Assembly: GCA_965240325.2 (NCBI GenBank) | Contig: OZ251227.1 | Coordinates: 1,302,001-1,366,000 of the forward strand | From: Rebecca billardiae RCC1528 | Lineage: Eukaryota > Protista > Haptophyta | Direction of reading: 5' to 3' | DNA: 64,000 nt | In this document: piece after piece, positions 936 to 35,665 of the stretch | Layout: each line of letters starts with the position of its first letter | Position numbering within the stretch: the first letter of the stretch is position 1 | The notes under the pieces: generated by a model | The model's database searches: none | Told to the model about the DNA's origin: nothing | Seen by the model: the letters and a program-made list of their open reading frames with translations, nothing else | Program-made: the position numbers and the translations under genes

Positions 936-1211
936 CGCTTGATAGTCGTACGTACCGCGGACCGGGCGCCATCGTTCTTGTCCACTACTTGTACGCAACC
1001 AGATTTTAAGTTTAGCCTTTTGCGGGCGTTTTAAGGCTTTAAGCGCCATTAGCCACACCACACGGCGCGTTAGTCCAAACCGGCACAACCGTCGTTGCGG
1101 CGTTGCCGGTTGGTTAGCCGGCTTCACTCGGTCGACCGTCTCGCGTCGTCCAATCGCGTGGCGCGGTTGGGCCGTGGGGCGCTCTCGGCCGCGTTTTTTT
1201 TTAGACTTGCT

Positions 1212-4200
1212 ATGGCTGCCCGCTGCGGGCTGATGCGCGCGCTGGGCTGCGTGCTCGCCCTGCCCGCCCTCACAGCCGGCGCGTGCACGTCGTCGACGTG
1301 GGCCGCGGGCGATTCGCCCACCGATGGTCTGCTTCCTCGCGCCTTCCTCGCCGCCGGCTCGCCCGGCTTCGTGCTCAACGCGACGTCCGTGCCGCGCGAC
1401 GAGGTCGAGGTCGGGCTGCTGGGCTGGACGCCACCCGGGCAGACGGTGACTGTCGGCGCGGTGGTGGGCGGCGTCGAGGTGTCGACCGTGGCCGAGGTGG
1501 CCTTGCGTCGCGCGCGCCCCTCGCACATCAACGCGACCGCGCGCACGCCCACCCTCTACGCCGACACCGAGGCGCGGCGCGCGCTGGCCGTCTTCTTCGT
1601 CGCGCGCGCGCCGTCCGGGCTCTCGCTCGTCGACCTGGACGGCGCGACGGTGTCGATGAGCCTGGAGCTGCGGGACGATGGCACCGAGTACTGCTCGAGC
1701 GCGTGGATGGGCCAGGGCTGCGTCGAGTACGGCTGCTCGCCCACTCCGGCGTGCAGCGCGCTCAGTGCCGAGGAGGTGCGCGCGGCAGCCGAGGACGCGT
1801 GCGTCTGCGCGCCCGCCGCGATCGACTACTCGGGCGTGGCGGGGTACGCGGCGCCCGTGCCGCGCTGCGAGCTGCACGCAGGCGCGGACGGGCTGCTCGC
1901 GGGCTCCGTGCTCGCGCAGCACGACGCCCTCGGCCTCGGCACCGACGCCGGCATGCAGTTTGGATCGGGCGAGTGCGTGGTCGAGCTGCCTGCCATCTGG
2001 TTCCTGCCCGGCACGGCGCGCGAGCTGGTGGCGACGGTGGCGCTCGAATACGCGCCGACGGGGAGCGCGGCGGGCGAGACGGTGCTGGGCGCGGCGTCCG
2101 CCACGCTCGCGCCCGCCGCGCTGCGCGAGCCGCTCGCGCCCGCGGTCGTGCGCGCCGAGCTGCCCGCGCGGCCGGTGCGCGCCGAGGGCGAGGCGTTCCC
2201 TGTGAGCCTTGTGCTGCACAGCGCTGGGGTGGCGGTTGGGAGCTGGGCGGTGACGGTGGAGTACAACGCGTCGATCCTGGAGCACGTGGGCACGCAGCTC
2301 GCCGAGGCGTTCGCGGAGCGGCCGTCGCCGCCGCCCTCGCCGCCGCCCTCGCCGCCGCCGCCCTCGCCGCCGCCCTCGCCGCCGCCCTCGCCGCCGCCCT
2401 CGCCGCCGCCGCCCTCGCCGCCGCCCTCGCCACCGCCGTCGCCGCCACCCCCGCCGCCATCGCCGCCGCCATCGCCGCCGCCATCGCCACCGCCATCACC
2501 GCCGCCCCCCGCGCCGCCGCCCCTGCCACCGCCCTCGCCACCGCCGCCGCTCCCGCCGCCCTCACCGCCGCCGCCCTCGCCGCCGCCCTCGCCGCCGCCC
2601 TCGCCGCCGCCGCCCTTCCCGCCGCCGCGGCCGCCGCCGCCCTCGCCCTCGCCGCCGCCGCCTCCGCCGTCGCTCCCGCCCGTGCCCGCGCCGCCGCCCT
2701 CGCCGCCGCCGCCGCCGCGCGCCGAGCCCTTGCCCCCGCCGAGCCCGCCCTCGCCACCGCCCTCGCCGCCGCCCTCGCCGCCGCCCGCGCCGCCGCCGCC
2801 GCCGCCAGGCTCGGTGACGCTCATGTCTGTCGACGTCGAGGGCGACGTCTCGGAGCTCACGCCCGCGGCGATCGAGGAGCTGCTCGACGGCTTCGAGGCG
2901 CTGACGGGGATCCCATCCGAGCAGATGCGCATCGTCGGCGTGAGCGGCGGCTCGGTGCTGCTCACCGTGCAGATCTTCCAGCGAGAGGCGGACGCGAACG
3001 TGGACGTGGAGCAAGCAGTTTCGAATCGAACTGTCGAGGAGGTGCAGGCGGCGCTGGGGCTGGACATTGCGGCTGTGCCGCGGAGGGTGTTCCCCGGGTG
3101 CACGGAGCCGGCGGCGCGGACGTACGACCCGAGCGCGACGTTCGACGACGGGAGCTGCGCGTACTTCTCGCCGCCGCCGCTGCCGCCCTCGCCGCCCTCG
3201 CGGCCGCCGCCCTCGCCGCCGCCGAGCCCGCCGCCCTCGCCGCCGCCGAGCCCGCCGCCAAGCCCGCCGCCACAGCCGCCGCCGAGCCCACCGCCGAGCC
3301 CGCCGCCATCGCCTCCGCCGCAGCCACCGCCACCACCGCGCACGGAGCCGTTCCCGCCGCCCTCGCCGCCCTCGCCGCCACCCTCGCCGCCACCTGCGCC
3401 GCCGCCGGCACCGCCGCCCTCGCCACCGCCCGCGCCGCCACCCGCGCCTCCGCCCGTGCCGCCGCCGCCCGCGCCGCCACCTGCGCCGCCGCCGTCGCCG
3501 CCACCGCCGGACCTCGGACTCTCGCCGCCACCCTCGCCGCCTTCCCGCCCCCCTCCGTCGCCGCCACTCTTGCCGCCGAGTCCGCCCCCAAGACCGCCGC
3601 CGCTACCGCCGCCCAGCCCGCCGCCCAGCCCGCCGCCCAGCCCGCCGCCGCGCCCGCCGCCTGCGCCGCCGCTCAGCCCGCCACCGAGCCCGCCACCATC
3701 GCCTCCGCCACAGCCGCCGCCGCCGCCGCGCACGGAGCCGTTCCCGCCGCCCTCGCCGCCCTCGCCGCCGCCGGCGCCGCCGCCCTCGCCGCCGCCCTCG
3801 CCGCCACCGGCGCCACCGCCCGCGCCGCCGCCCTCGCCGCCGCCAAGCCCACCGCCAAGCCCACCGCCCTCGTCGCCGCCGCCCGCGCCGCCACCCGCGC
3901 CGCCACCGGCGCCGCCACCCTCGCCTCCGCCGGCGCTGCCACCCGCGCCGCCGCCCTCGCCGCCGCCGCCCGCGCCGCCACCTGCGCCGCCGCCCTCGCC
4001 GCCACCGCCGGTCCTCGGAGTCTCGCCGCCACCGTCGCCTCCGTCACAGCCACCGCTGCCGCTGCCGCCGCCCAGCCCGCCGCCCAGGCCGCCGCCGCTA
4101 CCGCCGCCGAGCCCGCCGCCCAGCCCGCCGCCGCGCCCGCCGCCTGCGCCGCCGCTCAGCCCGCCACCGAGCCCGCCACCATCGCCTCCGCCACAGCCAC

Positions 4201-7200
4201 CGCCGCCGCTGCCGCCGCCCAGCCCGCCGCCCAGGCCGCCGCCGCTACCGCCGCCCAGCCCGCCGCCCAGCCCGCCGCCGCGCCCGCCGCCTGCGCCGCC
4301 GCTCAGCCCGCCACCGAGCCCGCCACCATCGCCTCCGCCACAGCCGCCGCCGCCGCCGCGCACGGAGCCGTTCCCGCCGCCCTCGCCGCCCTCGCCGCCG
4401 CCGGCGCCGCCGCCCTCGCCGCCGCCCTCGCCGCCACCGGCGCCACCGCCCGCGCCGCCGCCCTCGCCGCCGCCAAGCCCACCGCCAAGCCCACCGCCCT
4501 CGTCGCCGCCGCCCGCGCCGCCACCCGCGCCGCCACCGGCGCCGCCACCCTCGCCTCCGCCGGCGCTGCCACCCGCGCCGCCGCCCTCGCCGCCGCCGCC
4601 CGCGCCGCCACCTGCGCCGCCGCCCTCGCCGCCACCGCCGGTCCTCGGAGTCTCGCCGCCACCGTCGCCTCCGTCACAGCCACCGCTGCCGCTGCCGCCG
4701 CCCAGCCCGCCGCCCAGGCCGCCGCCGCTACCGCCGCCGAGCCCGCCGCCCAGCCCGCCGCCGCGCCCGCCGCCTGCGCCGCCGCTCAGCCCGCCACCGA
4801 GCCCGCCACCATCGCCTCCGCCACAGCCACCGCCGCCGCTGCCGCCGCCCAGCCCGCCGCCGAGGCCGCCGCCGCTACCGCCGCCCAGCCCGCCGCCCAG
4901 CCCGCCGCCGCGCCCGCCGCCTGCGCCGCCGCGCAGCCCGCCACCGAGCCCGCCACCATCGCCTCCGCCACAGCCGCCGCCGCCGCCGCGCACGGAACCG
5001 TTCCCCCCGCCCTCGCCGCCCTCGCCGCCGCCCTCGCCGCCGCCCTCGCCGCCGCCCTCGCCGCCACCGGCGCCGCCGCCCGCGCCGCCGCCCTCGCCGC
5101 CGCCAAGCCCACCGCCAAGCCCACCGCCCTCGTCGCCGCCGCCCGCGCCGCCACCCGCGCCGCCACCGGCACCGCCACCCTCGCCGCCGCCCTCGCCGCC
5201 ACCCGCGCTGCCACCCGCGCCGCCGCCCTCGCCGCCGCCGTCAGACCTTGGCCTCCCGCCCTCGCCGCCGCCGCCCTCGCCGCCGCCTCCGAGCCCGCCG
5301 CCCCCCGCGGGCAGCGGCAGCGGCGGTGGCAGCGGCACTCGTCGTCAGCTGCCTGAGGCGAGCAGCGGGCTGCCTGGCGCGCCGCTTCTCTTCGAGCTCT
5401 CGCTCTCGCCGCCGCCCTCGCCGCCCTCGGCCGGTCGCGCTCCCGCGCACGCCATGCCGCCGCTGCTCGCCGGCGGAGCCGCGCGCCAGCTGGGGGCCGT
5501 GAACGGCACGGATGTGGTCGCCAACGCCACCGCGGGCGGCGCCAACGCGACACTGGGCGGTGCCAACGCCACCGCGGGCGGCGCCAACGCGACAGCTGGC
5601 GACGACGAGGGCGGCCCGACGGGCGTGAGCGCGCCGAGCGGCGCGCTCATCTCCGTCGTCGGCGCCGCCAACGGCTTCGCCGACCCCTCGAGCCGCAGCG
5701 GCACGCAGCTCATCCTCGGCGTGGTTGTGTTCCGCGTGCGCGCGGGCGTGGGCGCGGGCGCGCACGGCGGCGTGCTCTCGCTCAGCGTGGAGCAGCTGCT
5801 GGACGACGCGTTCGAGCCGCTCGGGAGCGCGAGCGCGCCCGGCGGCGCGCGGCTCGACCTGGGCGGCTTCCTCCCGGCCGCCTCCGCCAACGGCACGCTC
5901 GTGGTCGAGGGCGCGGCGCGCACGCTGCATGCCTTTGGCCCCGCGGAGCTGCTCAACACAGCCGCGCTCTCCGGCGAGAGCGGCGCCGGCGTGCGCGTGG
6001 GCGCCGTCGAGCTGCCCGACCTGGCGGGGGAGCCGATCCGCGCCGTGCCCGAGCACGAACTCTCGTGCGAGCTCGAGAGCGAGTCGGAGCACGGCGCGGT
6101 GCTCAGCGCGGGCGCGGCGGCGTCCGGCGGCGGCGGGTGCGCTCTCTCTCTCCGCGCAGATCACACGGCGGGCGCGGCGGCCGCGCTCGTTCGGCTGTGG
6201 GCGCGCGCGGGCGCCGAGGCGGCGCCGCCGTCGGGCGTGCTCTCCGTGCGCGTGTGGTACCCCGTCAACGTCTCGCTCGCGCTCGAGCGCGCCACGCTGC
6301 GCCCGATCAGCGGCGCGTCGGCCGCGGCCGCCTCGTGTGGCCTCCACACAGACTCGGCGTGGCAGCGCTACTCGCAGGCGGCGCGCGTGGCGACGGTCGC
6401 GACGCTCGGCGGCGACGGGCTGCCGCCGCTGAGCGGCGTGGACGTGACGAGGCTGGCGCCCGCCGTGGCCGCGGACGCCGCCGTCGCGCTCGTCCAGCTC
6501 GACGCGCGCTGGTCCGTCGCCACCGTGCACGCGGTGTCGGAGGGCTCGACGAGCCTGTCCTGCTGCCCGCACCTCGGGCCTGGGGCCGCGCCCAACGTGT
6601 CGCTCAGCGTGCGCGCACAGGCGGAGGCGGTGGAGGTGTGCGCGCTGCGCGCGTTCGCGTTCACCGGCGTGCTCGTCGAGGCGCCCGACGCGCTCGTCCT
6701 CGACGCGGACGGCGTCTCCGAGCACGCCGCCATGCACATCCGCTTCGAGCTCGAGCAGTCGCTCGGCGCGGTCGGCGCGGTCGCGCAGCTCGCCGCGCGC
6801 GCGCGCCTCTCAGATGGGTCGGAGGTGGGGCTGGACGTCGCGGCGGAGACGGCGCTGGGCTCGACGCTGGAGAACGCTGAGATCGCGCTCACCTCGCCGC
6901 CGCCGCTCGGCTCGGCGGACGCCGCCGGCGCGACGAGCTGGGCGCTCACCGTCGCGGACGGCGGCTTTGGCGCCGACCTTGATGATTACCTGCGCGCCGC
7001 GTGGGCGCCATGCGCCGCTGACGAGGGCGAGGCCGCGGCGGTGCTGGGTCGCGGCAACGGCTCGGTCGCGCTCGAGCTGCAGCAGCCGGTGGGCCTGCTG
7101 CTGCAGGCGCTCCCCGTGTGCGCCGGCGGCACGCGCCTCGTCGCGTGCAACCCCGACGCCGTGGGCGAGACCGCCGAGGCGCACGCGCGCACCTCCGCGT

Positions 7201-10200: not shown

Positions 10201-13200
10201 CGCCGAGCCCGCCACCGTCGCCGCCGCCGAGCCCACCGCCCAGTCCCCCGCCGCGCCCGCCGCCCTCCCCGCCGCCACGCCCGCCGCCCTCCCCGCCGCC
10301 GAGCCCGCCGCCGTCGCCGCCGCCGAGCCCGCCGCCCAGTGCGCCGCCGAGCCCGCCACCGTCGCCCCCGCCGAGCCCGCCGCCCAGTCCCCCGCCGGGC
10401 GCGCCGCCCTTCCCGCCGCCGAGCACGCCGCCGAGCACGCCGCCCTCGCCACCGCCCTTCCCGCCGCCAAGCCCGCCACCAAGCCCGCCGCCCTTGCCGC
10501 CGCCGAGCCCCCCGCCCTCGCCGCCGCCGGCGTCGCCGCCGAGCCCGCCGCCCCTCCCACCGCCGAGCCCGCCGCCATCGCCTCCGCCACTACCGCCGCC
10601 GCCACCCCGCACGGAGCCCTTCCCGCCACCCTCGCCGCCTGCGCCGCCGCCCTCGCCGCCACCCGCGCCGCCGCCCGCGCCGCCACCCGCGCCGCCGCCC
10701 TCGCCGCCGCCCTCGCCGCCGCCCGCACCGCCGCCGAGCCCGCTGCCACCACCGCCGCCGAGCCCGCCGCCGAGCCCGCCGCCAAGCCCGCCACCTTCAC
10801 CGCCGCCGACTCCACCACCGAGCCCGCCGCCAAGCCCGCCACCTTCACCCCCGCCGACTCCGCCACCGAGCCCGCCGCCAAGCCCACCACCTTCACCGCC
10901 GCCGAATCCGCCACCGAGGCTGCCACCACCACCGCCACCGCCGCCGCCAAGTCCACCACCGAGCCCGCCACCTCCGCCGCCGCCGAACCCGCCGCCGAGC
11001 CCGCCACCGGCGCTGCCCCCGAGCCCACCGCCAAGCCCACCACCTTCGCCGCCGCCGACTCCGCCACCGAGCTCGCCACCGCCACCGCCGCCGACTCCGC
11101 CACCGAGCCCGCCACCTCAAACGCCGCCGACCCCGCCGCCGAGCCCTCCACCGGCGCTGCCCCCGAGCCCGCCGCCGAGCCCACCGCCGCCATCCCCGCC
11201 GCCGAGCCTGCCGCCGCCACCGCCGCCGAGCCCGCCTCCAGGACGGCCGCCTTCGCCCCCGCCCTTACCGCCGCCTTCGCTGCCGCCGATGCCGCCCTCG
11301 TCGCCGCCGCCCTCGTCGCCGCCGCCGATCGACCAGCCGCGCGTGCTGCGCGGCCAGCTGACGGTGGACACGACCGTGGGTGCGGTCGATGGCGCGGCGG
11401 AGGCGGCGGTGGCGGGCGCGATCGCGAGCGTGGGCGGCGTGCACCCCTCGCGCGTGCGCATCGACGGGTACGTGGCGGGCAGCGTCGTCTTCGACTTCTC
11501 CGTCGAGTTCGACGCGGAGCAGGCGGCGGACGCCTCGCGCGTGCTCGCGGCGCTGAGCGCGGACGCGGCGGTCTCAGAGCTGAGCTCGCAGCTCGAGTCG
11601 AGCGTCGGGACGGTGCTGGGCGTGGACGGGCTGGCGCTGACGGTGGCGCCCTCGCCGCCGCCCGGCTCGCCGCCGAGCGCGCCGCCGCGCTCGCCGCCCT
11701 CGCCACCACCGAGCCCTCCGCCCTCGCCGCCGCCGCCCTCGCCGCCGCCGCCGTCGCCGCCGCCCGCGCCACCGCCCTCGCCGCCTCCGAGCCCGCCACC
11801 CTCGCCGCCGCCGCCCTCGCCACCGCCGCCCTTGCCGCCGCCATTGCCGCCGCCCTCGCCGCCTCCTAGGGCGCCGCCGCAGCCGCCGCCCAGCCCGCCG
11901 CCCCGCCCACCGCCGACGCCGCCACCGATGCCTCCGCCGCGCGAGCCCCCATCCGCCCCGCCCCCGCCGCCGCCGCCGCTGTCTCCGCCTCCAGGCGCGC
12001 CGCCGACACCACCGCCGTCGCCCCCGCCCGCGCCTCCGCCGAGCCCTCCGCCTGCGCCGCCGCCATTGCTTCCACCGCTCTCGCCGCCCCCCGGGCCGCC
12101 ACCGCCGCCGTCGGTTCCGCCGCCAGCAGACCCGCCGGCGCCTCCACCCTCGCCGCAACCGAGCCCGCCGCCGAGCCCGCCGCCCAGACCGCCGCCAAGT
12201 CTGCCGCCGAGTCCGCCGCCGTCGTTGCCACCACCTTTGCGGCCGCCGCCCAGCCCGCCGCCAGCGCCACCGCCCTCGCCGCCTCCGTCCCCGCCACCCG
12301 CGCTGCCGCCGCCGCCCCCGCCCGCCTCGCCGCCCGCGCCGCCGCCGAGCCCGCCGCCGTCGCCGCCGCCGTCGCTCCCGCCATCTCCACCGCCGTCGCC
12401 TCGCCCTACGCCACCACCCTCGCCGCCTCCCGTGGCGCCGCCGCGGCCGCCACCATCACCGCCGCCCATGCCGCCACCCTCGCCGGAGCCGTCGATGCCG
12501 CCGGCGGCGCCGCCGCCGCCGCCACCCTCGCAGCCGCCTTCGTCGCCGCCGCCGCCGCCGCCCTCGCCGCCGCCGCCCTCGTCGCCGCCGCCGATCGACC
12601 AGCCGCGCGTGCTGCGCGGCCAGCTGACGGTGGACACGACCGTGGGCGCGGTCGATGGCGCGGCGGAGGCGGCGGTGGCGGGCGCGATCGCGAGCGTGGG
12701 CGGCGTGCACCCCTCGCGCGTGCGCATCGACGGGTACGTGGCGGGCAGCGTCGTCTTCGACTTCTCCGTCGAGTTCGGCGCGGAGCAGGCGGCGGACGCC
12801 TCGCGCGTGCTCGCGGCGCTGAGCGCGGACGCGGCGGTCTCAGAGCTGAGCTCGCAGCTCGAGTCGAGCGTCGGGACGGTGCTGGGCGTGGACGGGCTGG
12901 CGCTGACAGTGGCGCCCTCGCCGCCGCCCGGCTCGCCGCCGCTCCCGCCGCCGAGCCCGCCACCGCTCCCGCCGCCGCGGCCGCCGTCGCCGCCCTCGCC
13001 GCCGCCGTCGCCGCCGCCGCTGCCGCCCAACAAGCCACCCAGCCCACCCTCGCCGCCGCCGTCGCCGCCGCTGCCGCCGTCGCCGCCGCCGCCGTCGCCG
13101 CCGTCGCCGCCGGTGCCACCGTCGCCGCCGCCCTCGCCCGCGCCGCCGCCCTCACCGCCCTCGCCACCTCCGCCGCCGCCCTCGTCTCTGCACGCGCCGC

Positions 13201-16200
13201 GCGTGCGCTCGGTGCAGTTCGACGAGACGGCCACTCGGCTGCGCGTGCGCTTCGACCCGTGGCAGCGCACCAACCGCGCGGGCATGGCGGGCGTGCAGCC
13301 GTGCAGCCTGGTGCTCGACGCGCCCACGGTGGCGAGCGCGCGCGGCGACGGCACGAGTGCGCCCACTTGCTACTGGCTGGACGACGCCACCACGCTCGTG
13401 GTCAACCTCAACGTGCGCACCACCATCCGGCCCGGCTCGCGCGTCGGCGTGCGCGACAACGTGCTCGCGCCCGCCGCGTTCGGCGGCGCGTGCCCCCACG
13501 AGCTGTGCGCTGTGGGCGCGGAGGGCCTCGTCTCGACCGATGCGCCGTGCGGTGAGGCGGGCTGCCCCGCGCCCGTCGCCGCCATCAGCGCGCCCTCCAC
13601 CATCTCCGACTGCGACGGCGCGACGCTCGTCCTCGACGGCGCCGACTCGACCGGCGGCGGCATCGGCAGGCTGCGGTACCAGTGGGCCCTCGACGTCGAC
13701 GCCTCGTCCGCGGGCGCGGACGCGGTCGCCGAGCTGCTCGCGGGTGCGCCCGAGGACGCGTCACGGCTCGTGATCGGCGCGGCCACGCTCGGCGGCGCGA
13801 CCTCGCTCGTGCTACGGCTGGTGGTGGTCTCCGCCCTCGGCATCGGCTCCGAGCCCGCGTCGGCGGTGGTGAGCCGCTCGGGCCTCGGCCCCACGCCGAC
13901 GGTGCAGCTCGACGGCCCCTCCCACCTCGCGTACATCTCGTCCGCGCCCATCCAGCTCGCGGCGAGCGCGAGCCTTGCCTCGTGCTGGAGGGGCGAGTAC
14001 GCGGTCGACTTTTTGTGGAGCCACGTGGGCACGAGCGTGAGCGGCAGCGGGGAGGCCGCGACCGACGTGCCCACGCTGGCGCTCGGCGCGCTGGGCGGGC
14101 GCACCTCGCGGCTGCTGCTGCCCCCGGGCACGCTCTTCGCCGGCCGCACCTACCGCTTCGCCGTGCGCGCGTCGATGGCGGCGCAGCCCGCCGCGCGCTC
14201 GACCGAGCTCGTGAGTGTGCGCGTGCGGTACGACGCGCTCGTCGCGCGCATCGCCGGCGGCGACCGGCGCGTGAGCGCCGCCGGCGCGATCGCCCTCGAC
14301 GCGTCCGGCTCGTTCGACCCGTCGAGCGCGCCGCCGGCCGACGCCGTCTCGCTCTCGTACGCGTGGGAGCTGTGGGCGGCGCCCAACGGCACGGCGCTCG
14401 AGAGGGTGGCGCTGAGCGGTCTGGGCGCGGACGCGCGCTCGCTGCTGCTGCCGGCGGGCGCGCTGGCCGCGGGCGAGTACGAAGTGCGGCTCAGCCTCGC
14501 GTCCTCGGACGGCCGCGCCGCGGCGGCGAGCGCGCGGCTCGTCGTCGTCGCCTTCCCCACCGCCTCGCTCTCCTTCGCCCCCCTCGAGAAGGCGGTGTAC
14601 AACGCGGACGACAAGCTCGCGCTGCGCGCACTCTCGGTCGGGCTCGGCAGCGCCGACTCGTTGCTGGACGCGCTCGTCGCGGCGGGCGTGGCCGCGTCGG
14701 TGGAGGAGGCGCGCGCGCGCAACCTGAGCGCCGCGCACCTGCCGTGGGAGTACGCCTGGCGCGCGTACCCGCTGGCCGGCGCGGACGGCGCCTCGAGCGG
14801 CGCCGAGCTCGCGCTCGGCAGCGCGGCGGTCACGACGACGGGCGCGCACAAGACCAACCTGGCGGTGCGGCCTGGCACGCTCGTGCCGGGCGCGACGTAC
14901 GTGTTCGAGCTGACGGTGCAGGCGCCGCCCGCGGTGGGCGCGGAGACCGTCTCGCTGCAGCTCACGCTCAACCGCCCGCCGTACGGCGGCGGGCTGAGCC
15001 TCGCGCCCACGACCGGCGTGGCGACGAGCACGCGCTTCGAGCTGGGCGCGCTCGGCTGGGCGGACGAGCCTGAGCACCTGCCGCTCACGTTCGCGTTCAC
15101 GTATGCGCCCGCGGGCACGTCGGCGCCGGAGGAGCCGTCCGAGCTGGGCGCGGACGAGCGGCGGCTCACCGACGTGCTGCTCTCCTCGCGCGCCTCGGCG
15201 TACCTCCCCGCGGGCGAGCACAGCGTGCGCGTGCGCGTGAGTGACGTGCACGGCGCGCTCGCGCTCGCGCAGGCGTCGAGCTCGGCGGCGGTCGCGCCGC
15301 TCGAGCTGGACGAGCCGACGGTGGAGCAGGTGCTCGACGTGATCGACGTGGCGGCGGCGGTGGGCGAGACCGCCTCCGTGCACCAGCTCGTGCGCACGCT
15401 CGCCGCCGAGCTCGACAGCGTGGCGGCCGCGGGCAACGAGACGCTGGTGGGCGCGCTCTCGGCAGCGGACGCGCGCGCGGCCATGCTGCTGCAGCTCGAG
15501 GCAGCGGCCAACGCGACCGAGCCCACCGTCTCGGCGATCCGGCTGCAGGCCGAGTCGGCGCACGCGGTGCTCGCGAGCGACGGCGCGCTGGGGCAGCTCG
15601 GCGCGAGCGCGCAGCTCAGCGGCGCCGCGCTCATCCTCGGCCTCGCGCACGACTCGGCGGGCTCGGGCATCGACGACGTCTCGTCCACCCTCGTGCTCCA
15701 GGCCCTCTCCTCGCTGCTCGAGGCGAATGCGAGCGCGCTGAGCAGCGCGGGGGCGGTGGCGGAGCGCGACGAGCTCGTGGGCGAGGCGGCGCGCACGATC
15801 GCCACCTCGCTGCTCGTGGGCAACGTCGCGGGCGAGGCGGCGCGCGAGGCGCTGTCCGAGCTCGTCAACGTCTCGGCCGCGCGCGCGCTGCCCGCTGAGG
15901 TTGCATCTGGGGAGCTGTACGACGCGCCCGGCGGCGCGGCGGGCGGCGTGCGGCTCTCCACCGCCGCGCTGGTGGGCGTGGCGGTGGAGGAGGGCATCGA
16001 CGTGCTGCTCGTGCTCTTCTCGACCAACGTGCACGCCGCCGCACAGCTCGTCGCCGAGCTGGACGAGGGCGAGGGCGGCGGGTCGAACGGCACCAGCGGC
16101 GCCAACGGCACAGCCGCGGCGGCCGGCGCCGCGGCCGGCGCCGTGGGAGCGCTGGCCGAGCTCGAGGCGGGCTCGGTGCGCACGCCCGTGTTCTCCGTCA

Positions 16201-17808
16201 CGCTGGGCGCGGCGAGCTCGGCACAGGCCGCGTCGACCGAGCTCTCGATCGCCGGCCTGCCCGACGCCGAGCGCATCCTCATCCTCGTGCCCGCGCCGGA
16301 GACGCCGGCCGAGTGCGCGCCCACCTTCTTCGGGCCCTCGTGCGCGCTGCGCACCGAGTGCGCCTACTGGGAGGCGGAGGCGGCGAGCTGGGCGTCGGAG
16401 GGCTGCGAGACGGTGTACCACACCGACTCGGCGGACGTGCCGGCGGGCTCGCTCGGATGCCTCTGCTCGCACCTCACCGACTTCGCCGGGCTCGTCACGA
16501 TCCCGCAGAGCGCGGAGGAGGCGGAGGCGGACGCTGCGGGCGTGCGCTTCAACACGATCGGCACTGACCAGCTCGCGGCGCTCGCGGAGCCGCCCGACCT
16601 GGCCGCCAACCCGTGGGTGTACGCGCTCGTGTTCAGCATGGCGGGCGCCAACCTGCTCGCGCTGCTCCTCGGCGCGCTCGCCGACAAGCGCGCGCACCGG
16701 CACGGTGCCGCCAAGGTGGGCGCCGAGCCGGCGGCCGCCGCCGCCGCCGCCGCCTCGCAGAGCGCAGCGGCGGCCGCGCCGGGCGCCGGTCTCGCGCCCT
16801 CGGCCGGCGCGGGCGCGGCGGGCGAGGACGCGGTGCTGCGCTCGGCGGTCGCCGCGTTCGGCGGCGGCGGCGGCGCGCAGGGCGGCGGCGGGCGCGGCGC
16901 ACCGGCGGACGGCACGGCCGCCGCCGCCGCCGTCGCCGCCGGCTCCGCCGCCGCCGACGCGGGCGCGCTCGGCCCAAAGCGCGGCTCGGGCGGCCGCGTG
17001 CGCGAGGCGATGAACGAGCTGGCCGACAATGTGGAGCTGGCGCTGGACAAGATGGACGCCGCGTCGCGCGACGCGCACATGCAGGCCGCGCTCACCATCG
17101 AGCGATACGCGCGCGGGCGCATCCAGCGCCAGGCGGCGACTCGTCTGCGCGAGCTGCGCGAGGCCGCGCCCGCCGCCGCCGAGCTCGCGCTGCTCACTGA
17201 GCACCGCACGACCACCTTCATCCGCCAGCTGGGGCAGGCGATGACGTCGGAGCACACGGTGCTCGCCGTCTTCCTCGGCGACCCGGAGGAGGTGCACCGC
17301 GTCGAGTGCGTGCAGATCTTCTTCAACATGCTCGCGCTTGAGGCGCTGCTCGAGTGCATTCTCTTCTCCGACACGCCGTCCGCGGGCCCCAGCTCGATCG
17401 TGCAGCTCGTGCTCATCTCGCTGTTCGTGGCCGCGGTCGTCGCGCCCGCGCTCGTCGCGTTCAAGGCGGCGTTCGCGCTCGGGCACACCTCCAAGCCCAA
17501 GGTGCTCGACCGGCTCTTCAGGTCGCTCAAGACGCTGCAGGAGCTGCCCGCGCGCGCGAGCACGCCGGAGCCGTCCGCGCGCGCCTCGCGCGCGCGCGCG
17601 CGCGCCGGCTGGGACGACGCGCGGCGCGCGCAGCGCTCGGTGCCCGCGCTCGCGGGCGCGCTCAAGGCGCTCTCGCCCGCTGGCTCTCGGCGCTCGCTCG
17701 GCAGCGGCGCGTCGCGCGACCGGCTGGGCGGCGGCGGCAGCGATAGCGGCTCGGCGCGGCTGACCACGCCCATCTCGCCGCGCACGCCGCGCACGCCGCG
17801 CACGCCGC

Positions 17809-17839
<31 letters not shown>

Positions 17840-19182
17840 GGCGCCCCTCGCGATCGGCTCGCGCGTCGCGCCGCTCAAGGCCATCGCCCGGCTGCAGCCC
17901 GCTGTCGCCGCGCTGGGCGCGCTGGGCCCGGCGGCCGGCGCCGGCGCCGGCGCGGGCGGTGGCGACGAGGCGTTCGCGCGGCGGCCGCGCGCCGGCTCGG
18001 TCGAGCGGCCGCCCGCCAGGCTCGAGCCGTTGTCCAACGCGCCTCGGCTGCCGCCCGGCAGCTACAAGGCACCCGCCGCCGCGCCCGGCGCGCCGGCCGC
18101 GCGCGCCGCGCCCGCGCAGGCGTCGCCGAGAGCGCTCGCGCTGGTCACGCCAGCCGAGGGCGTGCGCGCGCGCGTCGAGCCGCCCAGCGCTCGGCCCGCG
18201 CCGCCGCCGACGGCGCCTCCGCCGGCCGAGGGCGCCGTGCGCTCGCGCCCGACGCTCGGCGAGGGCTCGGCCGAGTCGAGCCCGCCGCCCAGCCCGCCGC
18301 CGAGCCCGCCGCAGCAGCCGCGCGTGCGGCCGCCGCCGCCGGTGCAGACGCCCGCCGCCTCCGCCGGCGACGAGGCGCAGCCCGTGCTCCCGTCGCCGCG
18401 CTCGTCGGCGCCCTCCACCCCGCGCGAGGAGGCGGACGCGGACGTGCGCGTGCTGCGCCGCATCTTCAACCGCTTCGACGCAGACGGCTCGGGCACGATC
18501 GAGCCGGGAGAGCTCGACGCGCTGATGGCCGAGCTGGGCGAGCCGCTCGACAAGCTGCAGCTCGCGAGGCTGATGCGCCAGCTCGACCGCTCGCGCAACG
18601 GCCGCATCGACTTTGCCGAGCTCGAGGCGTGGTACCGCAAGCGGCGGGAGGTGCGTGCGCGCGCGGCGCGCGGCCCCGCCCTGCGCGCGCCGTCCGCGCG
18701 GCCCGGCCAGAATGCACCGGGCCGGCGCACTGGGCGGTGCGAGGCGCGCGCGCCGCGCGCGGGCGTGCACCCGGCGCTCACGCGCGCGCGCGCCGTCCGC
18801 GCCCCCGCGCCCTCGCCCGCAGGCCGAGCACAAGCGCCGGCTGCGCGCCGAGCGCTGGGCCAAGTACAAGCCGTCGACGCGCACGAGGCGCGCGCTCGCG
18901 TGGGCGTTCATGCTGCTCTCGTACGCCGTCTTCTCCGCGCTGATCGTCGTGTACGGCCTCTTCTTTGGCAACGCCAAGATGGAGCGGCTCGTGCAGTCGT
19001 GGGGGCTCGCGCTCGTGCAGACGTTTGGCGTCGAGGAGCCGCTGCTGATCACGCTCACGCAGCTCGTGCCCTACCTGATGGAGCGGCTCACCTCGAACGA
19101 GGCCTTCGCCCAGATCGTGCACGAGCTGCTCAGCACGGGCGTGGGCAAGGCCATCAGCTCGTGCTTCTCCATCTTCCGCTGA
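1212..19182 (+). CDS. Giant (~5,930 aa) polycystin-1/REJ-GPS-like membrane protein with TMEM132-like, cohesin-, dockerin- and SEA-like domains, Pro-rich repeats, IQ motif and EF-hands. Exons 1212-18650 and 18823-19182.
   Basis: ATG 1212 with signal peptide (MAARCGLMRALGCVLALPALTAG). REJ-type motifs LVLDGADSTG..LRYQW, IAGGDRRV..LDASGSFDP, NRPPYGG..P.TG..T.F..GW.D. GPS CAYW..WASEGC..CLCSHLTDF at 16359-16484. TM segments near 16612, 17300, 17395, 18890 and 18985. EF-hand loops DADGSGTIEPGE and DRSRNGRIDFAE. A phase-0 intron 18651-18822 (GAG|GTGCGT...CCCGCAG|GCC) restores the last two TM helices. Confidence 0.85.
2322..5310 (+). repeat. Coding Pro-rich (SPPP/APPP) low-complexity tract I, including a ~630-bp unit repeated about 2.5-3 times
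   Basis: CCG/TCG/AGC repeats. The RTEPF-encoding landmark recurs at 3731, 4361 and 4991 (630-bp spacing). Identical antisense ORFs at 3673-4053 and 4303-4683. Confidence 0.9.
9573..13185 (+). repeat. Coding Pro-rich tract II with two near-identical SEA-like domain copies (about 11328-11670 and 12594-12936)
   Basis: (PPSP)n-encoding DNA. IDQPRVLRGQ...GYVAGSVVFDFSVEF...LALTVAPSP occurs twice, 1266 bp apart, with one D/G change. Confidence 0.9.
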
Positions 19183-19427
19183 CGAGTGTCGGCTGACGAC
19201 AGCCTGAGCCAGTTCTTCCTTGAGCGCGGTGAGCCTGCCGCGCTGGAATCGTTCACGTTGCCAGCAGACGTTCACGAATCACGTTGGTCGACTCGGGGTC
19301 TCGGCCCGTCTCGGGCGTTATCACATCACAGATCACATTCGTTGGTTGGGGGCTGGCCAGGGTAGGGCTGGAGGCTTCGGCCGCCAGTCTGATCACCCGG
19401 AGCCCGTTATAAAGGGGACGAATTTAT

Positions 19428-23221: not shown

Positions 23222-23529
23222 TGCCAAGGCGCATGCGGAATAGTGTGTGCCCCTCGTACCTGAACCTCACCCCGGCTGCTCGCCGGACCCAGCGCCATGA
23301 CCGCTGCGCGCACCGCGTGCGCGTGCGGCTCGCAGTCGCGGACGCTTCGTCCGCAAACCGCGGGCGGTCAGAAGGATGCAGCAGCTTCGGGAGGTGCCGC
23401 ATCGGAGTGCCTGCTGCTTCGAGCTGCTGCTTCTTGCTTCTCCCACCACCTGCGAGCACTCCCACCACCTGCGCGCTTGCTTCTGCTTGCTTCTCCCACC
23501 ACCTGCGCGCTTGTTTCTTGCGTGCACTG

Positions 23530-24192: not shown

Positions 24193-24459
24193 ATTGATGA
24201 AGTCGTGGTGGCCTGTTATGTGGCGCGCGGCGCTGACTGGTCACAGAGCTGTAGGCCAGCGGGGCGAGCCCTGCATTCCGGTAGGACCGGGGTGAATGCA
24301 GCATTGCCGGGTGCAACCCGGCAATGCCCGCCTGAATGGTAATCATGATAATACTATTGCTCATCACACTTATTATAATAGCGCGCTCATTAATGTCTGT
24401 CTGTATATTCGGCCCGGTGCGACAAGTTGTCAGACTTATTTTAAAGTTGCATGTATCAT

Positions 24460-35587: not shown

Positions 35588-35665
35588 TATTAATTATATA
35601 TATACGTCTTTATATACTCGCGAATATATATATACATATACACACACACACATATATATATATAT
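35588..35665. repeat. (TA)n/(CA)n microsatellite (second copy at 46237-46314)
   Basis: TATATATA and CACACACAC runs. Confidence 0.85.

What the first reader, a model, noticed from the sequence alone, without database searches (positions are those of the whole stretch)
1212..19182. Giant TMEM132 / cohesin-dockerin / SEA / REJ-GPS hybrid receptor with its own Ca2+ sensor and no channel
Seen: one ~5,930-aa protein ordered signal peptide, cohesin-like, Pro rods plus SEA-like, TMEM132-like block, second cohesin-like, dockerin-like, Pro rods plus 2 SEA-like, REJ, GPS, TM1, IQ, TM2-3, EF-hand pair, TM4-5, stop. Known: REJ-GPS followed by TM1-5 is the N-terminal membrane part of polycystin-1. Animal PKD1 has a PLAT domain after TM1 and a 6-TM channel module, and neither is visible here. 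TMEM132 is known as a separate single-pass family. Inference: an algal surface adhesion or mechanosensing receptor that self-cleaves at the GPS, is Ca2+/calmodulin-regulated from inside, and may partner a separate PKD2-type channel. I know no description of this architecture. It is the best candidate for a new system in the window.
Basis: partly seen in the sequence, partly recalled or inferred. Interest (0 to 1): 0.85.

Follow-up and report, generated by a model that had tools for sequence, protein, structure and literature searches.

The report
Giant stalked algal REJ-GPS receptor
A very GC-rich haptophyte-type alga appears to encode one surface protein of about 5,930 residues: an adhesion head like animal TMEM132, with bacterial-type cohesin and dockerin "glue" modules, sits on a proline rod about 0.3 micrometres long, and the rod is anchored by a polycystin-1-like self-cleaving module with a five-helix membrane core, calcium-binding EF-hands and no ion channel.

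Summary
One reading frame (1212-18650) plus one GT..AG intron (18651-18822) and a last exon (18823-19182) gives about 5,932 residues.

- **Direct Pfam hits:** REJ (2.4e-34), GPS (1.9e-6, HL|T site intact) and an EF-hand pair (4e-13).
- **Head:** Pfam misses it directly, but it has 128 homologues in haptophytes, a green alga and Diphylleia. These carry Ig_TMEM132_4th, Cohesin and Dockerin_1 hits. Family HMMs built without our sequence place all three in it. AF2 models give cohesin folds at Z 13.3-13.7.
- **Absent:** PLAT and the PKD channel, here, in relatives and in the neighbouring 45 kb.
- **Splice and end:** a transcript of the Pavlovales sp. CCMP2436 orthologue runs from the EF-hands through TM4-5 to its stop. 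This supports both the splice and the channel-less end.
- **Orthologous locus:** it is collinear, but annotated as three gene models separated by assembly gaps.
- **Not established:** the SEA-like modules, the IQ motif in our copy, homology of the five helices to polycystin-1, and single-transcript status (no RNA run was listed).
- **Oddity:** cohesin-1 is split by an insert of about 1,108 residues that 19 homologous modules lack.

The scan has already noted both halves (the cassette and the channel-less base) on other DNA of this genome. I class it as a new variant of a known kind.

The parts
1212..1283 (+). Start codon and signal-peptide-like N-terminus (about 24 aa)
   Evidence: First ATG of the ORF. 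The hydrophobic N-terminus aligns with the N-terminus of the CCMP2436 orthologue P0005. No signal-peptide predictor was run.
1284..2150 (+). N-terminal Cys-rich domain A, fold unknown
   Evidence: Only P0005 is homologous: aa 12-357 match P0005 6-347, E 1.7e-51. The AF2 model of P0005 has pLDDT below 50 here. No Pfam or PDB hit.
2151..2312 (+). Cohesin-1, N-terminal half (aa 314-367)
   Evidence: A cohesin-1 HMM built without our sequence matches at HMM positions 6-58. The alignment with 18 contiguous homologues is.
2313..5633 (+). In-frame insert of about 1,108 aa inside cohesin-1. It holds proline rod 2286-2846, the SEA-like module B with a GC..DDGSC motif at 2847-3140, proline rod 3141-5345 (147-nt and 12-nt tandem repeats), and an Asn-Ala-Thr sequon-rich linker at 5346-5633.
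   Evidence: Absent from 19 homologous modules and from the CCMP2436 genomic DNA, where one exon is contiguous. B shows coding periodicity but lower GC3, 0.78-0.82. Tandem repeats.
5634..5921 (+). Cohesin-1, C-terminal half (about aa 1475-1570)
   Evidence: The HMM built without our sequence matches positions 67-127 at aa 1475-1535; both halves together give E 1.9e-7 at Z=1e6. The orthologue's intact domain (P0005 300-465) matches solved cohesins at Z 13.7, rmsd 2.5 A, 137 residues aligned to a 144-residue chain.
5934..6266 (+). Ig_TMEM132_4th-like (BIG-type) Ig domain, aa 1575-1685
   Evidence: An HMM from 19 homologue rows gives E 1.6e-9 at Z=1e6. In the parent 21-row alignment, 15 rows hit Pfam PF16070, best 3e-16. 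Atlas look-alikes are haptophyte clusters carrying PF16070, score 0.95.
6267..8018 (+). Further beta-rich block of the cassette (aa 1686-2269), probably more Ig-like domains
   Evidence: Homologous to the cassettes of P0001, P0006, P0064 and P0100. P0084 and P0033 hit Ig_TMEM132_5th in their cassettes. The orthologue model resembles NUP210 and LigA Ig arrays. Not resolved domain by domain here.
8019..8300 (+). Beta domain preceding cohesin-2 (aa 2270-2363)
   Evidence: HMM built without our sequence, E 5e-11. AF2 model pLDDT mostly 76-93.
8301..8735 (+). Cohesin-2 (aa 2364-2508)
   Evidence: HMM built without our sequence, E 8e-34. 29 of 63 family members hit Pfam Cohesin. AF2 model residues 102-243 match cohesin 2vo8_A at Z 13.3, rmsd 2.8 A, 128 residues aligned to a 135-residue chain, and the top 12 matches are all cohesins. 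Foldseek target TM-scores are 0.6-0.67.
8736..8822 (+). Cohesin-dockerin linker, lacking the RR and RRL sites conserved in most family members
   Evidence: Column view of alignment A1. The CCMP2436 orthologue P0003 lacks them too.
8823..9035 (+). Dockerin (aa 2538-2608), two D-x-[SNT]-x-D...D calcium-type loops
   Evidence: HMM built without our sequence, E 7e-9. The family profile hits solved type I dockerins, best E 1.8e-8. 9 of 63 members hit Pfam Dockerin_1. The loops are read from the sequence.
9042..9563 (+). C-terminal beta-sandwich of the cassette (aa 2611-2784)
   Evidence: HMM built without our sequence, E 1.7e-18 for aa 2633-2766. AF2 strands at model residues 347-518. Fold family not determined.
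9564..13190 (+). Stalk: Ser-Pro3-type rods (9564-11357, 11628-12635, 12885-13190; about 1,040 aa, roughly 0.32 micrometre if polyproline-II) carrying two SEA-like modules, D (11358-11627) and E (12636-12884)
   Evidence: Composition and tandem repeats. D and E differ at 3 of 315 nt. Both carry a G-S-V-V motif, but no SEA profile hits them and the Atlas gives SEA at only 0.81. Rod length is an inference from 0.31 nm per residue.
13191..15401 (+). PKD-like repeats and REJ domain (aa 3994-4730)
   Evidence: Pfam REJ 2.4e-34; PKD_4 and K319L-like PKD below cut-off. 41% identical to the CCMP2436 locus, E 7e-115.
15402..16487 (+). GAIN-like region ending in the GPS motif (aa 5049-5092). The predicted cut is between L5088 and T5089 (T codon at 16476-16478).
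   Evidence: Pfam GPS 1.9e-6, above cut-off. The C-x-C-x-H-L-T-x-F motif is conserved in homologues. Weak PDB match to the ADGRG6 GPS region, E 0.14. The GAIN fold itself was not modelled.
16611..16685 (+). TM1 (aa 5134-5158)
   Evidence: Kyte-Doolittle 2.07. The N-P-W-x-Y start and basic residues after the helix are conserved.
17085..17147 (+). IQ-like motif in cytosolic loop 1 (Q replaced by E in our copy)
   Evidence: No Pfam IQ hit in ours at E up to 10. Aligned homologue segments do hit: P0142 at 3e-4 (above cut-off), others at 0.011-0.064.
17307..17486 (+). TM2 (17307-17366) and TM3 (17379-17486)
   Evidence: Kyte-Doolittle 1.82 and 2.78. The surrounding motifs are conserved in P0140-P0143 and P0149.
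18450..18638 (+). EF-hand pair with two canonical 12-residue loops, in cytosolic loop 2
   Evidence: Pfam EF-hand_7 4.1e-13, and EF-hand_1, _5 and _6. Loops read from the sequence.
18651..18822 (+). Intron, 172 nt, GTGCGT...CAG
   Evidence: Sequence, frame-specific GC3, and continuity of the transcript-derived orthologue P0141 across the junction.
18823..19182 (+). Last exon: TM4 (18889-18972), TM5 with a conserved V-E-E-P motif (18997-19068), a tail of about 37 aa, and the stop at 19180-19182
   Evidence: GC3 0.975. Aligns with the C-termini of P0141 and P0143, which also stop soon after TM5. TM4 scores Kyte-Doolittle 2.27. TM5 stays below the 1.6 threshold in ours, but the equivalent helix in P0141 scores 1.71.

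Best explanation
This is one gene (two exons, about 5,932 aa) for a stalked cell-surface receptor of a Pavlovales-type haptophyte.

**Shown by sequence, profile or model.** From the tip inward the protein has:
- a TMEM132-like adhesion cassette: cohesin, BIG-type Ig domains, a second cohesin, a calcium-loop dockerin and a beta-sandwich
- about 1,040 residues of Ser-Pro3 rod carrying two small duplicated modules
- PKD-like repeats and a REJ domain
- a GPS motif with an intact H-L-T site
- four clear hydrophobic helices and one weaker one
- an IQ-like motif and a canonical EF-hand pair, each in a loop that the helix order places in the cytosol
- no PLAT and no channel domain

**Inferred mechanism.**
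1. The head binds a partner. The partner may be another cassette protein of the same cell surface, bound through cohesin-dockerin contacts, or a foreign surface.
2. The rod, probably hydroxylated and glycosylated, holds the head about 0.3 micrometre from the membrane and transmits tension.
3. The protein is cut at the GPS during maturation, as in polycystin-1 and adhesion GPCRs. Pulling on the N-terminal fragment then alters or sheds it and changes the state of the five-helix core.
4. The cytosolic EF-hand pair reads local Ca2+. Either it or calmodulin engages the IQ-like helix, so the receptor's output is tuned by, or coupled to, Ca2+ entering through a separate channel.
For: **Direct Pfam hits.** REJ 2.4e-34, GPS 1.9e-6 and EF-hand_7 4e-13.

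**Coding frame and intron.** One coding frame with GC3 0.94-0.98 runs through all the globular segments, and the intron is supported by the GC3 switch.

**Head.**
- 128 homologues.
- 29 of 63 aligned members hit Cohesin and 9 of 63 hit Dockerin_1.
- 15 of 21 aligned members hit Ig_TMEM132_4th.
- The family profile hits solved dockerins at 1.8e-8.
- HMMs built without our sequence place cohesin-2 (8e-34), the dockerin (7e-9) and the Ig4-like domain (1.6e-9) in our protein.
- The AF2 model of aa 2265-2790 has pLDDT 83.5, with cohesin matches at Z 13.3.

**Same gene order elsewhere.**
- The CCMP2436 locus is collinear, head then assembly gap then REJ base.
- Its REJ gene model starts at an internal Met, without a signal peptide, inside sequence that is conserved further upstream.
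- The Diphylleia transcript P0084 carries TMEM132-type Ig, cohesin, REJ, GPS and a TM helix in one ORF.

**Base ends without a channel.**
- The transcript-derived P0141 runs REJ, GPS, TM1, IQ, TM2-3, EF pair, TM4-5, stop.
- No PLAT or PKD_channel hit in ours or in P0140-P0143.
- The ORFs of at least 250 aa beyond 26 kb that were scanned are unrelated genes.

**Topology.** Basic residues flank the cytosolic ends of TM1, TM3 and TM4, and both Ca-related elements fall on the same side.
Against: - No RNA run could be listed for this DNA. A single transcript, retention of the 3.3-kb insert and the absence of hidden in-frame introns are therefore unproven.
- CCMP2436 annotators called three genes at the orthologous locus.
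- No experiment supports cleavage, binding, glycosylation or signalling.
- The five-helix core has no detectable similarity to polycystin-1 or to any solved chain. Its signalling mode is unknown.
- The IQ motif is degenerate in our copy.
- Cohesin-1 is interrupted, which may disable it.
- The linker sites conserved in most cassettes are missing here.
Confidence: 0.6

Rival explanations
1. The protein is a passive structural tether. It is a building block or anchor of the cell coat or scale layer. The cohesin-dockerin cassette cross-links it to the other giant rod proteins of this genome, and the REJ-GPS-5TM part is only a membrane anchor, with no signalling role.
For: - The same cassette occurs, often several times per chain, in many giant proteins that end in a single TM helix or none. 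P0001 has three cassettes, and P0008, P0015, P0017, P0046 and P0083 each have one C-terminal helix.
- Earlier scan notes describe such fibres in this genome.
- Ser-Pro3 rods are typical of structural hydroxyproline-rich glycoproteins (general knowledge).
Against: - A simple anchor needs one helix, as in Diphylleia P0084.
- Here a five-helix core with conserved polar motifs, a canonical EF-hand pair and an IQ-type helix is conserved across Pavlovales paralogues and orthologues. That conservation argues for a regulated cytosolic function.
Confidence: 0.2
2. The protein is the non-pore subunit of a polycystin or TRP-type channel complex. The five-helix base docks onto a separately encoded PKD2-like or TRP channel and gates it, as polycystin-1 does with PKD2, or as proposed for Mstax with PKD2 in Chlamydomonas mastigonemes.
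For: - REJ-GPS receptors classically pair with PKD2-type channels (established knowledge of PKD1/PKD2 and sea-urchin REJ proteins).
- Mstax is a known Hyp-rich rod protein of about 8,000 aa with lectin domains and a PKD2-like membrane region, thought to join three PKD2 protomers (bioRxiv 10.1101/2024.12.24.630281).
- EF-hands next to the membrane would suit sensing of local Ca2+ entry.
Against: - Our protein lacks the six-helix channel-like half through which polycystin-1, and by prediction Mstax, take a protomer's place in the tetramer.
- No PKD2-type gene lies in the window.
- The scan's notes on this genome, searched by the words polycystin, channel and TRP, showed none.
- There is no sequence similarity to polycystin-1 membrane helices.
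Confidence: 0.15
3. It is not one gene. The long ORF is an accident of stop-poor GC-rich and (CCG)n DNA that joins two or three neighbouring genes (head, cassette end, REJ base), as annotated in CCMP2436.
For: - Stop-free frames of up to 1,748 codons occur on other frames and on the other strand here.
- Proline-repeat DNA has no stops in any frame.
- CCMP2436 has three gene models at the orthologous locus.
- No RNA evidence is available.
Against: - All six globular segments share one frame. Five further segments falling in the first one's frame by chance would be about (1/3)^5.
- The base-only models lack a signal peptide and start at an internal Met within conserved sequence.
- The CCMP2436 models are separated by runs of N, not by resolved intergenic DNA.
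- Diphylleia expresses head and REJ-GPS in one transcript.
- Rod codons keep high GC3.
Confidence: 0.07
4. Sub-question about the insert. The 3.3-kb insert in cohesin-1 (2313-5633) is removed or alternatively spliced, so the mature protein has an intact cohesin-1 and about 4,820 residues.
For: - The insert is absent from 19 homologous modules and from the orthologue's genomic DNA.
- Apart from one short stretch of the head (about 6942-7076), it contains the only non-proline stretches of the whole ORF with lowered GC3, 0.78-0.82.
Against: - The insert is an exact multiple of three and in frame.
- Module B has clear codon periodicity, GC2 0.35-0.47 against GC3 0.8-0.9.
- The linker carries repeated N-x-T sequons, as an extracellular segment would.
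- No convincing in-frame GT..AG pair with a pyrimidine-rich CAG acceptor, like that of the confirmed intron, was seen at the borders.
Confidence: 0.25

Closest known systems
Polycystin-1 / PKDREJ / sea-urchin REJ receptor family
   Same: Extracellular PKD-like repeats and a REJ domain are followed by a GPS motif with the H-L-T cleavage triad, about 45 residues before the first membrane helix. The ectodomain is large and modular. A link to Ca2+ is suggested.
   Different: There is no PLAT domain after TM1, and no six-helix TRP-like channel half or TOP domain. The core has five helices, not 1, 2 or 11. The cytosolic loops carry an IQ-like helix and an EF-hand pair. The membrane helices have no detectable sequence similarity to any solved chain. 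The head and rod are of unrelated types.
TMEM132 family (Sanchez-Pulido and Ponting 2017, PMC6030884)
   Same: A cohesin domain is followed by BIG-type Ig domains that match, through homologues, Pfam Ig_TMEM132_4th (and the 5th in relatives). The protein is extracellular and presumably adhesive.
   Different: TMEM132 is single-pass with WIRS and PP1 motifs and has no dockerin. That paper placed the architecture's origin in early holozoans and noted that no dockerin is detectable in vertebrates. Here the cassette has a second cohesin plus a dockerin, lies in a haptophyte, and is mounted on a rod and a REJ-GPS base. Cohesin-1 is split by about 1,108 residues.
Bacterial cellulosome cohesin-dockerin pairs
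   Same: Cohesin jelly-roll fold (Z 13.3-13.7 to solved cohesins), and a duplicated-segment dockerin with Ca-type loops that matches type I dockerin sequences by profile.
   Different: This is a eukaryotic surface protein with cohesin and dockerin in the same chain, about 30 residues apart, and no enzymes or scaffoldin context. Binding is untested.
Mstax, the axial protein of Chlamydomonas mastigonemes (bioRxiv 10.1101/2024.12.24.630281)
   Same: A giant (about 8,000 aa) hydroxyproline-rich rod protein with globular binding domains at the distal end and a polycystin-related membrane region at the base.
   Different: Mstax has lectin domains and a PKD2-like channel-type membrane region predicted to join PKD2 protomers. 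Ours has a TMEM132/cohesin/dockerin head, REJ-GPS and a five-helix non-channel core with EF-hands. Lineage (green alga versus haptophyte) and rod repeats also differ.
Adhesion GPCRs
   Same: A large adhesive ectodomain and a GPS (GAIN-type) autoproteolysis motif next to the membrane. A tethered-fragment mechanism is plausible.
   Different: There is no seven-helix class B domain. The core has five helices with different loops.
Paralogues in the same genome and in Pavlovales (earlier scan notes; GenBank KAJ1633484-86, KAG8459354)
   Same: The same REJ-GPS, IQ, EF-hand, five-helix base (42-43% identity in P0140 and P0141), and the same cassette in other giants.
   Different: Other paralogues reportedly carry RCC1, lectin, LRR, FG-GAP/kringle or IPT heads. 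This one uses the TMEM132-like cassette and lacks the cassette's usual RR/RRL linker sites.

Membership tests
Polycystin-1 / REJ receptor family | REJ domain | tested here: met
   Pfam PF02010, 2.4e-34 and 119 bits against a cut-off of 25.
Polycystin-1 / REJ receptor family | GPS motif with H-L-T/S cleavage site just before TM1 | tested here: met
   Pfam PF01825, 28.7 bits against a cut-off of 22.5. C-x-C-x-H-L-T-x-F is conserved in homologues. Cleavage itself was not tested.
Polycystin-1 / REJ receptor family | PLAT domain in the first cytosolic loop | tested here: not met
   No PLAT hit at E up to 1-10 in the whole C-terminal 1,681 aa or in the loop piece. The loop is Ala/Gly-rich and then helical. 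PLAT is also absent from P0140-P0143.
Polycystin-1 / REJ receptor family | Eleven helices, the last six forming a TRP-like channel domain (Pfam PKD_channel) | tested here: not met
   No PKD_channel hit. The protein stops about 37 aa after helix 5, and the transcript-derived orthologue does the same. No such ORF lies in the next 45 kb.
Polycystin-1 / REJ receptor family | Sequence homology of the membrane helices to polycystin-1 | tested here: not met
   phmmer of the membrane pieces against all PDB chains found only chance-level matches to unrelated proteins. A structural comparison was not possible, because the joined model was not built.
TMEM132 | Cohesin domain preceding the Ig domains | tested here: met
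   Cohesin-1 halves are detected by an HMM built without our sequence. The orthologue's intact domain matches cohesins at Z 13.7. In ours the domain is split by an insert.
TMEM132 | BIG-type Ig domains matching Ig_TMEM132_4th, 5th and 6th | tested here: inconclusive
   There is no direct Pfam hit in ours. The 4th-domain equivalent is placed at aa 1575-1685 by a homologue HMM at 1.6e-9, and 15 of 21 aligned homologue rows hit PF16070. The 5th is seen only in relatives. The 6th appears only as an Atlas lead.
TMEM132 | Single-pass membrane anchor with cytosolic WIRS and PP1 motifs | tested here: not met
   The cassette is followed by a rod, REJ-GPS and five helices. The motifs were not searched for.
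Cohesin-dockerin system | Cohesin fold | tested here: met
   Z 13.3, rmsd 2.8 A, 128 residues aligned to the 135-residue chain 2vo8_A, and the top 12 matches are all cohesins. Family members hit Pfam Cohesin.
Cohesin-dockerin system | Dockerin with two Ca-binding loop-helix segments | tested here: met
   The family profile hits solved type I dockerins at 1.8e-8. The HMM built without our sequence gives 7e-9 at aa 2538-2608. Both 12-residue loops have D at positions 1, 5 and 12. There is no direct Pfam hit in ours.
Cohesin-dockerin system | Ca2+-dependent binding of the dockerin to a cohesin | not testable with these tools
   Needs binding assays or a complex structure.
SEA domain | SEA alpha/beta fold with a G|S-V-V-V type autoproteolysis site | tested here: inconclusive
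   G-S-V-V and G-S-V-L motifs are present. There is no Pfam SEA hit; B weakly hits TRADD-like_N below cut-off. The Atlas places a SEA cluster only at rank 8, score 0.81. B and D are not significantly alike.
EF-hand Ca2+ sensors | Paired EF-hands with canonical 12-residue loops | tested here: met
   EF-hand_7 at 4.1e-13, plus four single-hand models above cut-off.
IQ calmodulin-binding motif | [IVL]Q-x3-RG-x3-R helix | tested here: inconclusive
   Ours has E in place of Q and no Pfam hit. The aligned segment of P0142 hits IQ above cut-off (3e-4), and three other homologues hit weakly.
Adhesion GPCR | Seven-helix class B domain after the GPS | tested here: not met
   No 7tm hit, and five helices at most.

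The most novel reading that the evidence does not exclude
The receptor is a self-contained, channel-less polycystin-type mechanosensor that uses three force-sensitive non-covalent joints in series. The first is a cohesin domain held together across a loop of about 1,100 residues (a 'safety-pin'). The second is an in-chain cohesin-dockerin Ca2+ latch. The third is the cleaved GPS. Its own EF-hand pair docks on its own IQ-type helix to report Ca2+. The cassette would also show that the TMEM132 ectodomain predates Holozoa and originally came with a dockerin partner. That would point to the missing ligand logic of the human TMEM132 family.
Probability: 0.12. Interest if true: 0.85.

Novelty: new variant of a known kind. 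Interest (0 to 1): 0.6.

Why it matters
If this is one protein, an alga has combined three adhesion or sensing inventions usually discussed separately: the animal TMEM132 ectodomain, the bacterial cohesin-dockerin clip and the polycystin-1 REJ-GPS module. It mounts them on a plant-like hydroxyproline-type rod, over a membrane core with its own Ca2+ sensor and no pore.

- **Polycystin biology.** It offers a natural 'front half only' receptor, useful for asking what REJ-GPS modules do without a fused channel.
- **TMEM132 biology.** TMEM132 is an orphan human adhesion family linked to hearing loss and panic disorder. This protein supplies relatives outside Holozoa that carry a dockerin in the same chain, which suggests a testable binding logic.
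- **Algal cell biology.** It is one member of a large paralogous set of stalked receptors that may underlie surface sensing or coat assembly in Pavlovales.

All functional statements are still predictions.

Tried and rejected
**Searches that gave nothing**
- Direct Pfam scans of the head in whole and in pieces: no cohesin, dockerin, TMEM132 or SEA hit, even at E up to 10. The claim had to be tested through homologues.
- phmmer of the head and of domain A against PDB sequences: nothing useful.
- The search for homologous proteins on the REJ-to-TM region and on the GPS-to-TM3 region of the giant query: no hits, probably because Ala/Gly-rich words filled the candidate list. A third search limited to the REJ part worked.
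- The look-up of sequencing runs: no RNA run was listed, so read laying could not be used and no expression evidence exists for this genome.
- phmmer of TM2-3 and of the last exon against PDB: only chance-level matches.
- Exact look-up of the neighbouring desaturase, to name the organism: not on record. The organism is called 'Pavlovales-type' from best hits and GC content only.
- The repeat finder on the D/E region was swamped by the proline repeats. A local BLAST and a codon comparison replaced it.

**Ideas left unconfirmed or unresolved**
- From memory, the segment before TM2 resembles the post-PLAT motif of polycystin-1. This was not confirmed by any search and is left as a lead.
- A splice that would excise the cohesin-1 insert: I inspected GT and AG sites at both borders. 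The only in-frame pair (2286/5609) would delete conserved cohesin residues and has no pyrimidine-rich acceptor. It is not adopted and not excluded.
- The AF2 model of the orthologue's first 300 residues was too poor (pLDDT below 50) to name the fold of domain A.

Full report
**1. What is in the sequence**

The + strand holds an ORF from 1095 to 19196, with its first ATG at 1212. The DNA is 72-87% G+C. Long stop-free stretches are therefore common, up to 1,748 codons on the other strand, and ORF length is weak evidence by itself.

Codon-position composition is stronger evidence. In the frame of 1212, every non-proline segment has GC3 of 0.94-0.98 and GC2 of 0.45-0.60. Six globular segments separated by proline-rich DNA all use this one frame.

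After the EF-hands the frame-0 translation turns into Arg/Ala-rich nonsense with GC3 0.448. The +1 frame from 18823 has GC3 0.975 and encodes hydrophobic helices. The two frames are joined by a 172-nt interval with GTGCGT...CAG ends. Splicing it out gives 5,813 + 119 = 5,932 residues, with the stop at 19180-19182.

**2. The base: REJ, GPS, helices, Ca2+ elements**

Pfam hits the C-terminal part directly:
- REJ at 2.4e-34.
- GPS at 1.9e-6, above its cut-off.
- An EF-hand pair at 4.1e-13.
- PKD-type repeats weakly.

The GPS has the full Cys/Trp pattern and H-L-T. A cut there would leave a new N-terminus at T5089.

Hydropathy gives TM1 (aa 5134-5158), TM2 and TM3 (5366-5425), TM4 in the last exon, and a weaker fifth helix with a conserved V-E-E-P motif. 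With the N-terminus outside, this order puts both the IQ-like helix (loop 1) and the EF-hands (loop 2) in the cytosol. Basic residues flank the cytosolic ends of TM1, TM3 and TM4.

There is no PLAT and no PKD_channel hit at permissive thresholds. Loop 1 is Ala/Gly-rich and then helical, which is not what a PLAT beta-sandwich would look like.

**3. Relatives of the base, and transcript support**

A search limited to the REJ part found P0140 and P0141 (42-43% identity, 96% coverage) and more distant paralogues.

P0141 is an MMETSP transcript ORF. It lies in the same 90%-identity cluster as GenBank KAJ1633484, 'REJ domain-containing protein' of Pavlovales sp. CCMP2436. Its Pfam hits and its C-terminal sequence give the order REJ, GPS, TM1, IQ-type helix, TM2-3, EF-hand pair, TM4-5, stop. 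It runs uninterrupted from the EF-hands through a stretch that aligns with our last exon.

This supports three points:
- The splice junction at 18651-18822 is real.
- The protein really ends shortly after helix 5.
- The base is a conserved family. P0140, P0142, P0143 and Diacronema lutheri KAG8459354 share the motifs.

P0140, a gene call on unspliced DNA, shows the same kind of read-through after the EF-hands as our frame 0. This suggests a conserved intron position.

The IQ-type segment hits Pfam IQ in four homologues, above cut-off in one, but not in ours, where E replaces Q.

The membrane pieces found nothing meaningful among all PDB sequences. 'TM1-5 of polycystin-1' is therefore an analogy, not a demonstrated homology.

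**4. The head**

Pfam and PDB sequence searches of our head found nothing. An exhaustive HMMER search of 1.84 billion representatives with aa 1576-2775 found 128 homologues. Named examples include:
- Prymnesium parvum KAL1521827, with three cassettes in one chain.
- Diacronema lutheri KAG8459670.
- Pavlovales sp. CCMP2436 KAJ1633485 and KAJ1633486.
- Cymbomonas tetramitiformis KAK3261630.
- A Diphylleia rotans transcript.

These homologues carry significant Pfam hits to Ig_TMEM132_4th, Cohesin and, more weakly, Dockerin_1. In the two alignments I built:
- 29 of 63 members hit Cohesin and 9 of 63 hit Dockerin_1.
- 15 of 21 members hit Ig_TMEM132_4th and 6 of 21 hit Cohesin.

The family profile hits solved type I dockerins at 1.8e-8.

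To tie this to our own sequence, I built HMMs from the homologues alone and searched our protein, scaling E-values to a database of one million sequences:

| Module | Position in our protein (aa) | E-value |
|---|---|---|
| Ig_TMEM132_4th equivalent | 1575-1685 | 1.6e-9 |
| Beta domain before cohesin-2 | 2270-2364 | 5e-11 |
| Cohesin-2 | 2364-2508 | 8e-34 |
| Dockerin | 2538-2608 | 7e-9 |
| Terminal beta domain | 2633-2766 | 1.7e-18 |

AF2 with the 63-row alignment gave a confident model of aa 2265-2790 (pLDDT 83.5, pTM 0.85). Its residues 102-243 match solved cohesins at Z 13.3 (rmsd 2.8 A, 128 residues aligned to a 135-residue chain). The top 12 matches are all cohesins (Foldseek).

The Atlas language-model search independently pointed to haptophyte clusters carrying TMEM132 Ig families.

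**5. The split cohesin**

The first cohesin of the cassette is contiguous in 19 homologous modules. In ours, its N-terminal half ends near aa 367 and its C-terminal half resumes near aa 1475.

A cohesin-1 HMM built from the homologues hits ours as two pieces: HMM positions 6-58 and positions 67-127. The pieces lie 1,108 residues apart.

In CCMP2436 the corresponding genomic DNA is one uninterrupted exon. Its predicted domain (P0005 residues 300-465) matches cohesins at Z 13.7. The insertion point maps to a loop between two strands.

The insert holds two proline rods, module B with a short Cys-flanked motif, and a sequon-rich linker. It is in frame, and B has clear codon periodicity. Apart from one short stretch of the head (about 6942-7076), it also holds the only non-proline stretches of the whole ORF with reduced GC3, 0.78-0.82. 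I found no convincing splice pair that would remove it.

I regard it as probably translated (about 0.7) and evolutionarily recent. Only RNA or peptides can settle this.

**6. Stalk and SEA-like modules**

The rods are 12-nt-period Ser-Pro3-type repeats. The three between head and REJ total about 1,040 residues. That is roughly 0.32 micrometre as a polyproline-II helix, which is an inference.

Modules D and E differ at 3 of 315 nt, so they are a recent duplication or conversion. B is not significantly similar to D.

All three have a G-S-V-(V/L) motif like the SEA cleavage site. No profile supports SEA, and the Atlas gives a SEA cluster only at rank 8 with score 0.81.

**7. One gene or several?**

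No RNA run could be listed. Four lines of indirect evidence favour one gene:
- **Frame.** One frame runs throughout.
- **Signal peptide.** The only signal-peptide-like N-terminus is at the head. It is conserved in P0005. Base-only models start at an internal Met inside sequence that stays conserved further upstream.
- **Synteny.** The CCMP2436 locus has the same order on one strand: domain A, cohesin-1 and Ig; then cohesin-2 and dockerin; then the REJ base. Runs of N lie exactly where rods would be expected. The three consecutive GenBank models therefore look like fragments.
- **A single transcript elsewhere.** The Diphylleia transcript P0084 carries Ig_TMEM132_4th and 5th, Cohesin, a PKD-like repeat, REJ, GPS and one helix in a single ORF.

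**8. Surroundings**

The stop is followed by lower-GC DNA.

The ORFs of at least 250 aa beyond 26 kb that were scanned include a 3-beta-HSD-type dehydrogenase, an acyltransferase, threonyl-tRNA-synthetase-like and cytochrome-b5 desaturase genes inside a 10.65-kb tandem duplication, and a UvrD-type helicase. None is a channel.

**9. Comparison and novelty**

The protein works like, and partly belongs with, the REJ-GPS receptors. It fails the PLAT and channel criteria of polycystin-1.

The head belongs to the TMEM132-like cassette family, but with a second cohesin and a dockerin. Sanchez-Pulido and Ponting placed the TMEM132 architecture's origin in early holozoans and noted that dockerins are undetectable in vertebrates (PMC6030884).

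The nearest described object of similar design is Mstax of Chlamydomonas: a Hyp-rich rod with lectin domains and a PKD2-like membrane region.

Full-text searches found no paper that links cohesin and dockerin, or REJ and GPS, with haptophytes.

Within this scan, other agents had already described both the cassette and the channel-less five-helix base on other DNA of this genome. What this locus adds:
- The two halves are combined in one gene.
- Cohesin-1 is split.
- The RR and RRL linker sites that most cassettes conserve are missing here, as in the CCMP2436 orthologue.
- There is orthologue and transcript support.

Noticed in passing
window 31270-41000 and 41919-51649: A tandem segmental duplication with a period of 10,649 nt, 99.99% identical over at least 9,731 nt. 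It carries a threonyl-tRNA-synthetase-like ORF, an unnamed 525-aa ORF and a cytochrome-b5-fused fatty-acid desaturase in each copy. It is either very recent or an assembly duplication.
   Followed up: partly
window 11340-11654 and 12606-12920: The two stalk modules D and E differ at only 3 of 315 nt (2 synonymous, 1 Asp/Gly). The flanking proline repeats have diverged to about 93% with indels. This points to recent duplication or gene conversion confined to the globular part.
   Followed up: yes
window 2922-3130 and 5277-5450: Apart from one short stretch of the head (about 6942-7076), these are the only non-proline stretches of the 17.4-kb ORF with GC3 below 0.85. Both lie inside the insert that splits cohesin-1. 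This suggests the insert is younger or of different origin than the rest of the gene.
   Followed up: partly
window 8736-8822 (alignment A1): Most cassettes of this family conserve RR and RRL sites in the loop between cohesin-2 and the dockerin. This receptor and its CCMP2436 orthologue lack both sites. The Diphylleia REJ-linked cassette has only a weak K-R.
   Followed up: yes
L001/L002 (Pavlovales sp. CCMP2436, MU631401.1, about 283.7-316.9 kb): Three consecutive GenBank models (KAJ1633486, KAJ1633485, KAJ1633484) are collinear with the head, the cohesin-dockerin part and the REJ base of our protein. They are separated by runs of N, so they are probably fragments of one orthologous giant gene whose rods were not assembled.
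   Followed up: yes
P0084 (Diphylleia rotans transcript, 2,743 aa): A distant eukaryote (CRuMs) expresses TMEM132-type Ig domains, a cohesin and dockerin-like segment, a PKD-like repeat, REJ and GPS with a single helix and an acidic tail. The head-plus-REJ-GPS combination is therefore not confined to haptophytes.
   Followed up: partly
window 3060-3140: A short motif of the form G-C-x-x-P...Y-D-P...D-D-G-S-C-x-Y follows module B. A similar one starts Diacronema KAG8459354 (P0149, near residue 38). It may be a small disulphide-bonded module common in these giants.
   Followed up: no
window 22980-24340: Both strands hold long ORFs made of a short repeated unit (translated as runs rich in Tyr-His-Ala-Arg-Ser or Trp-Tyr-Gly-Thr-Ala).
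   Followed up: no
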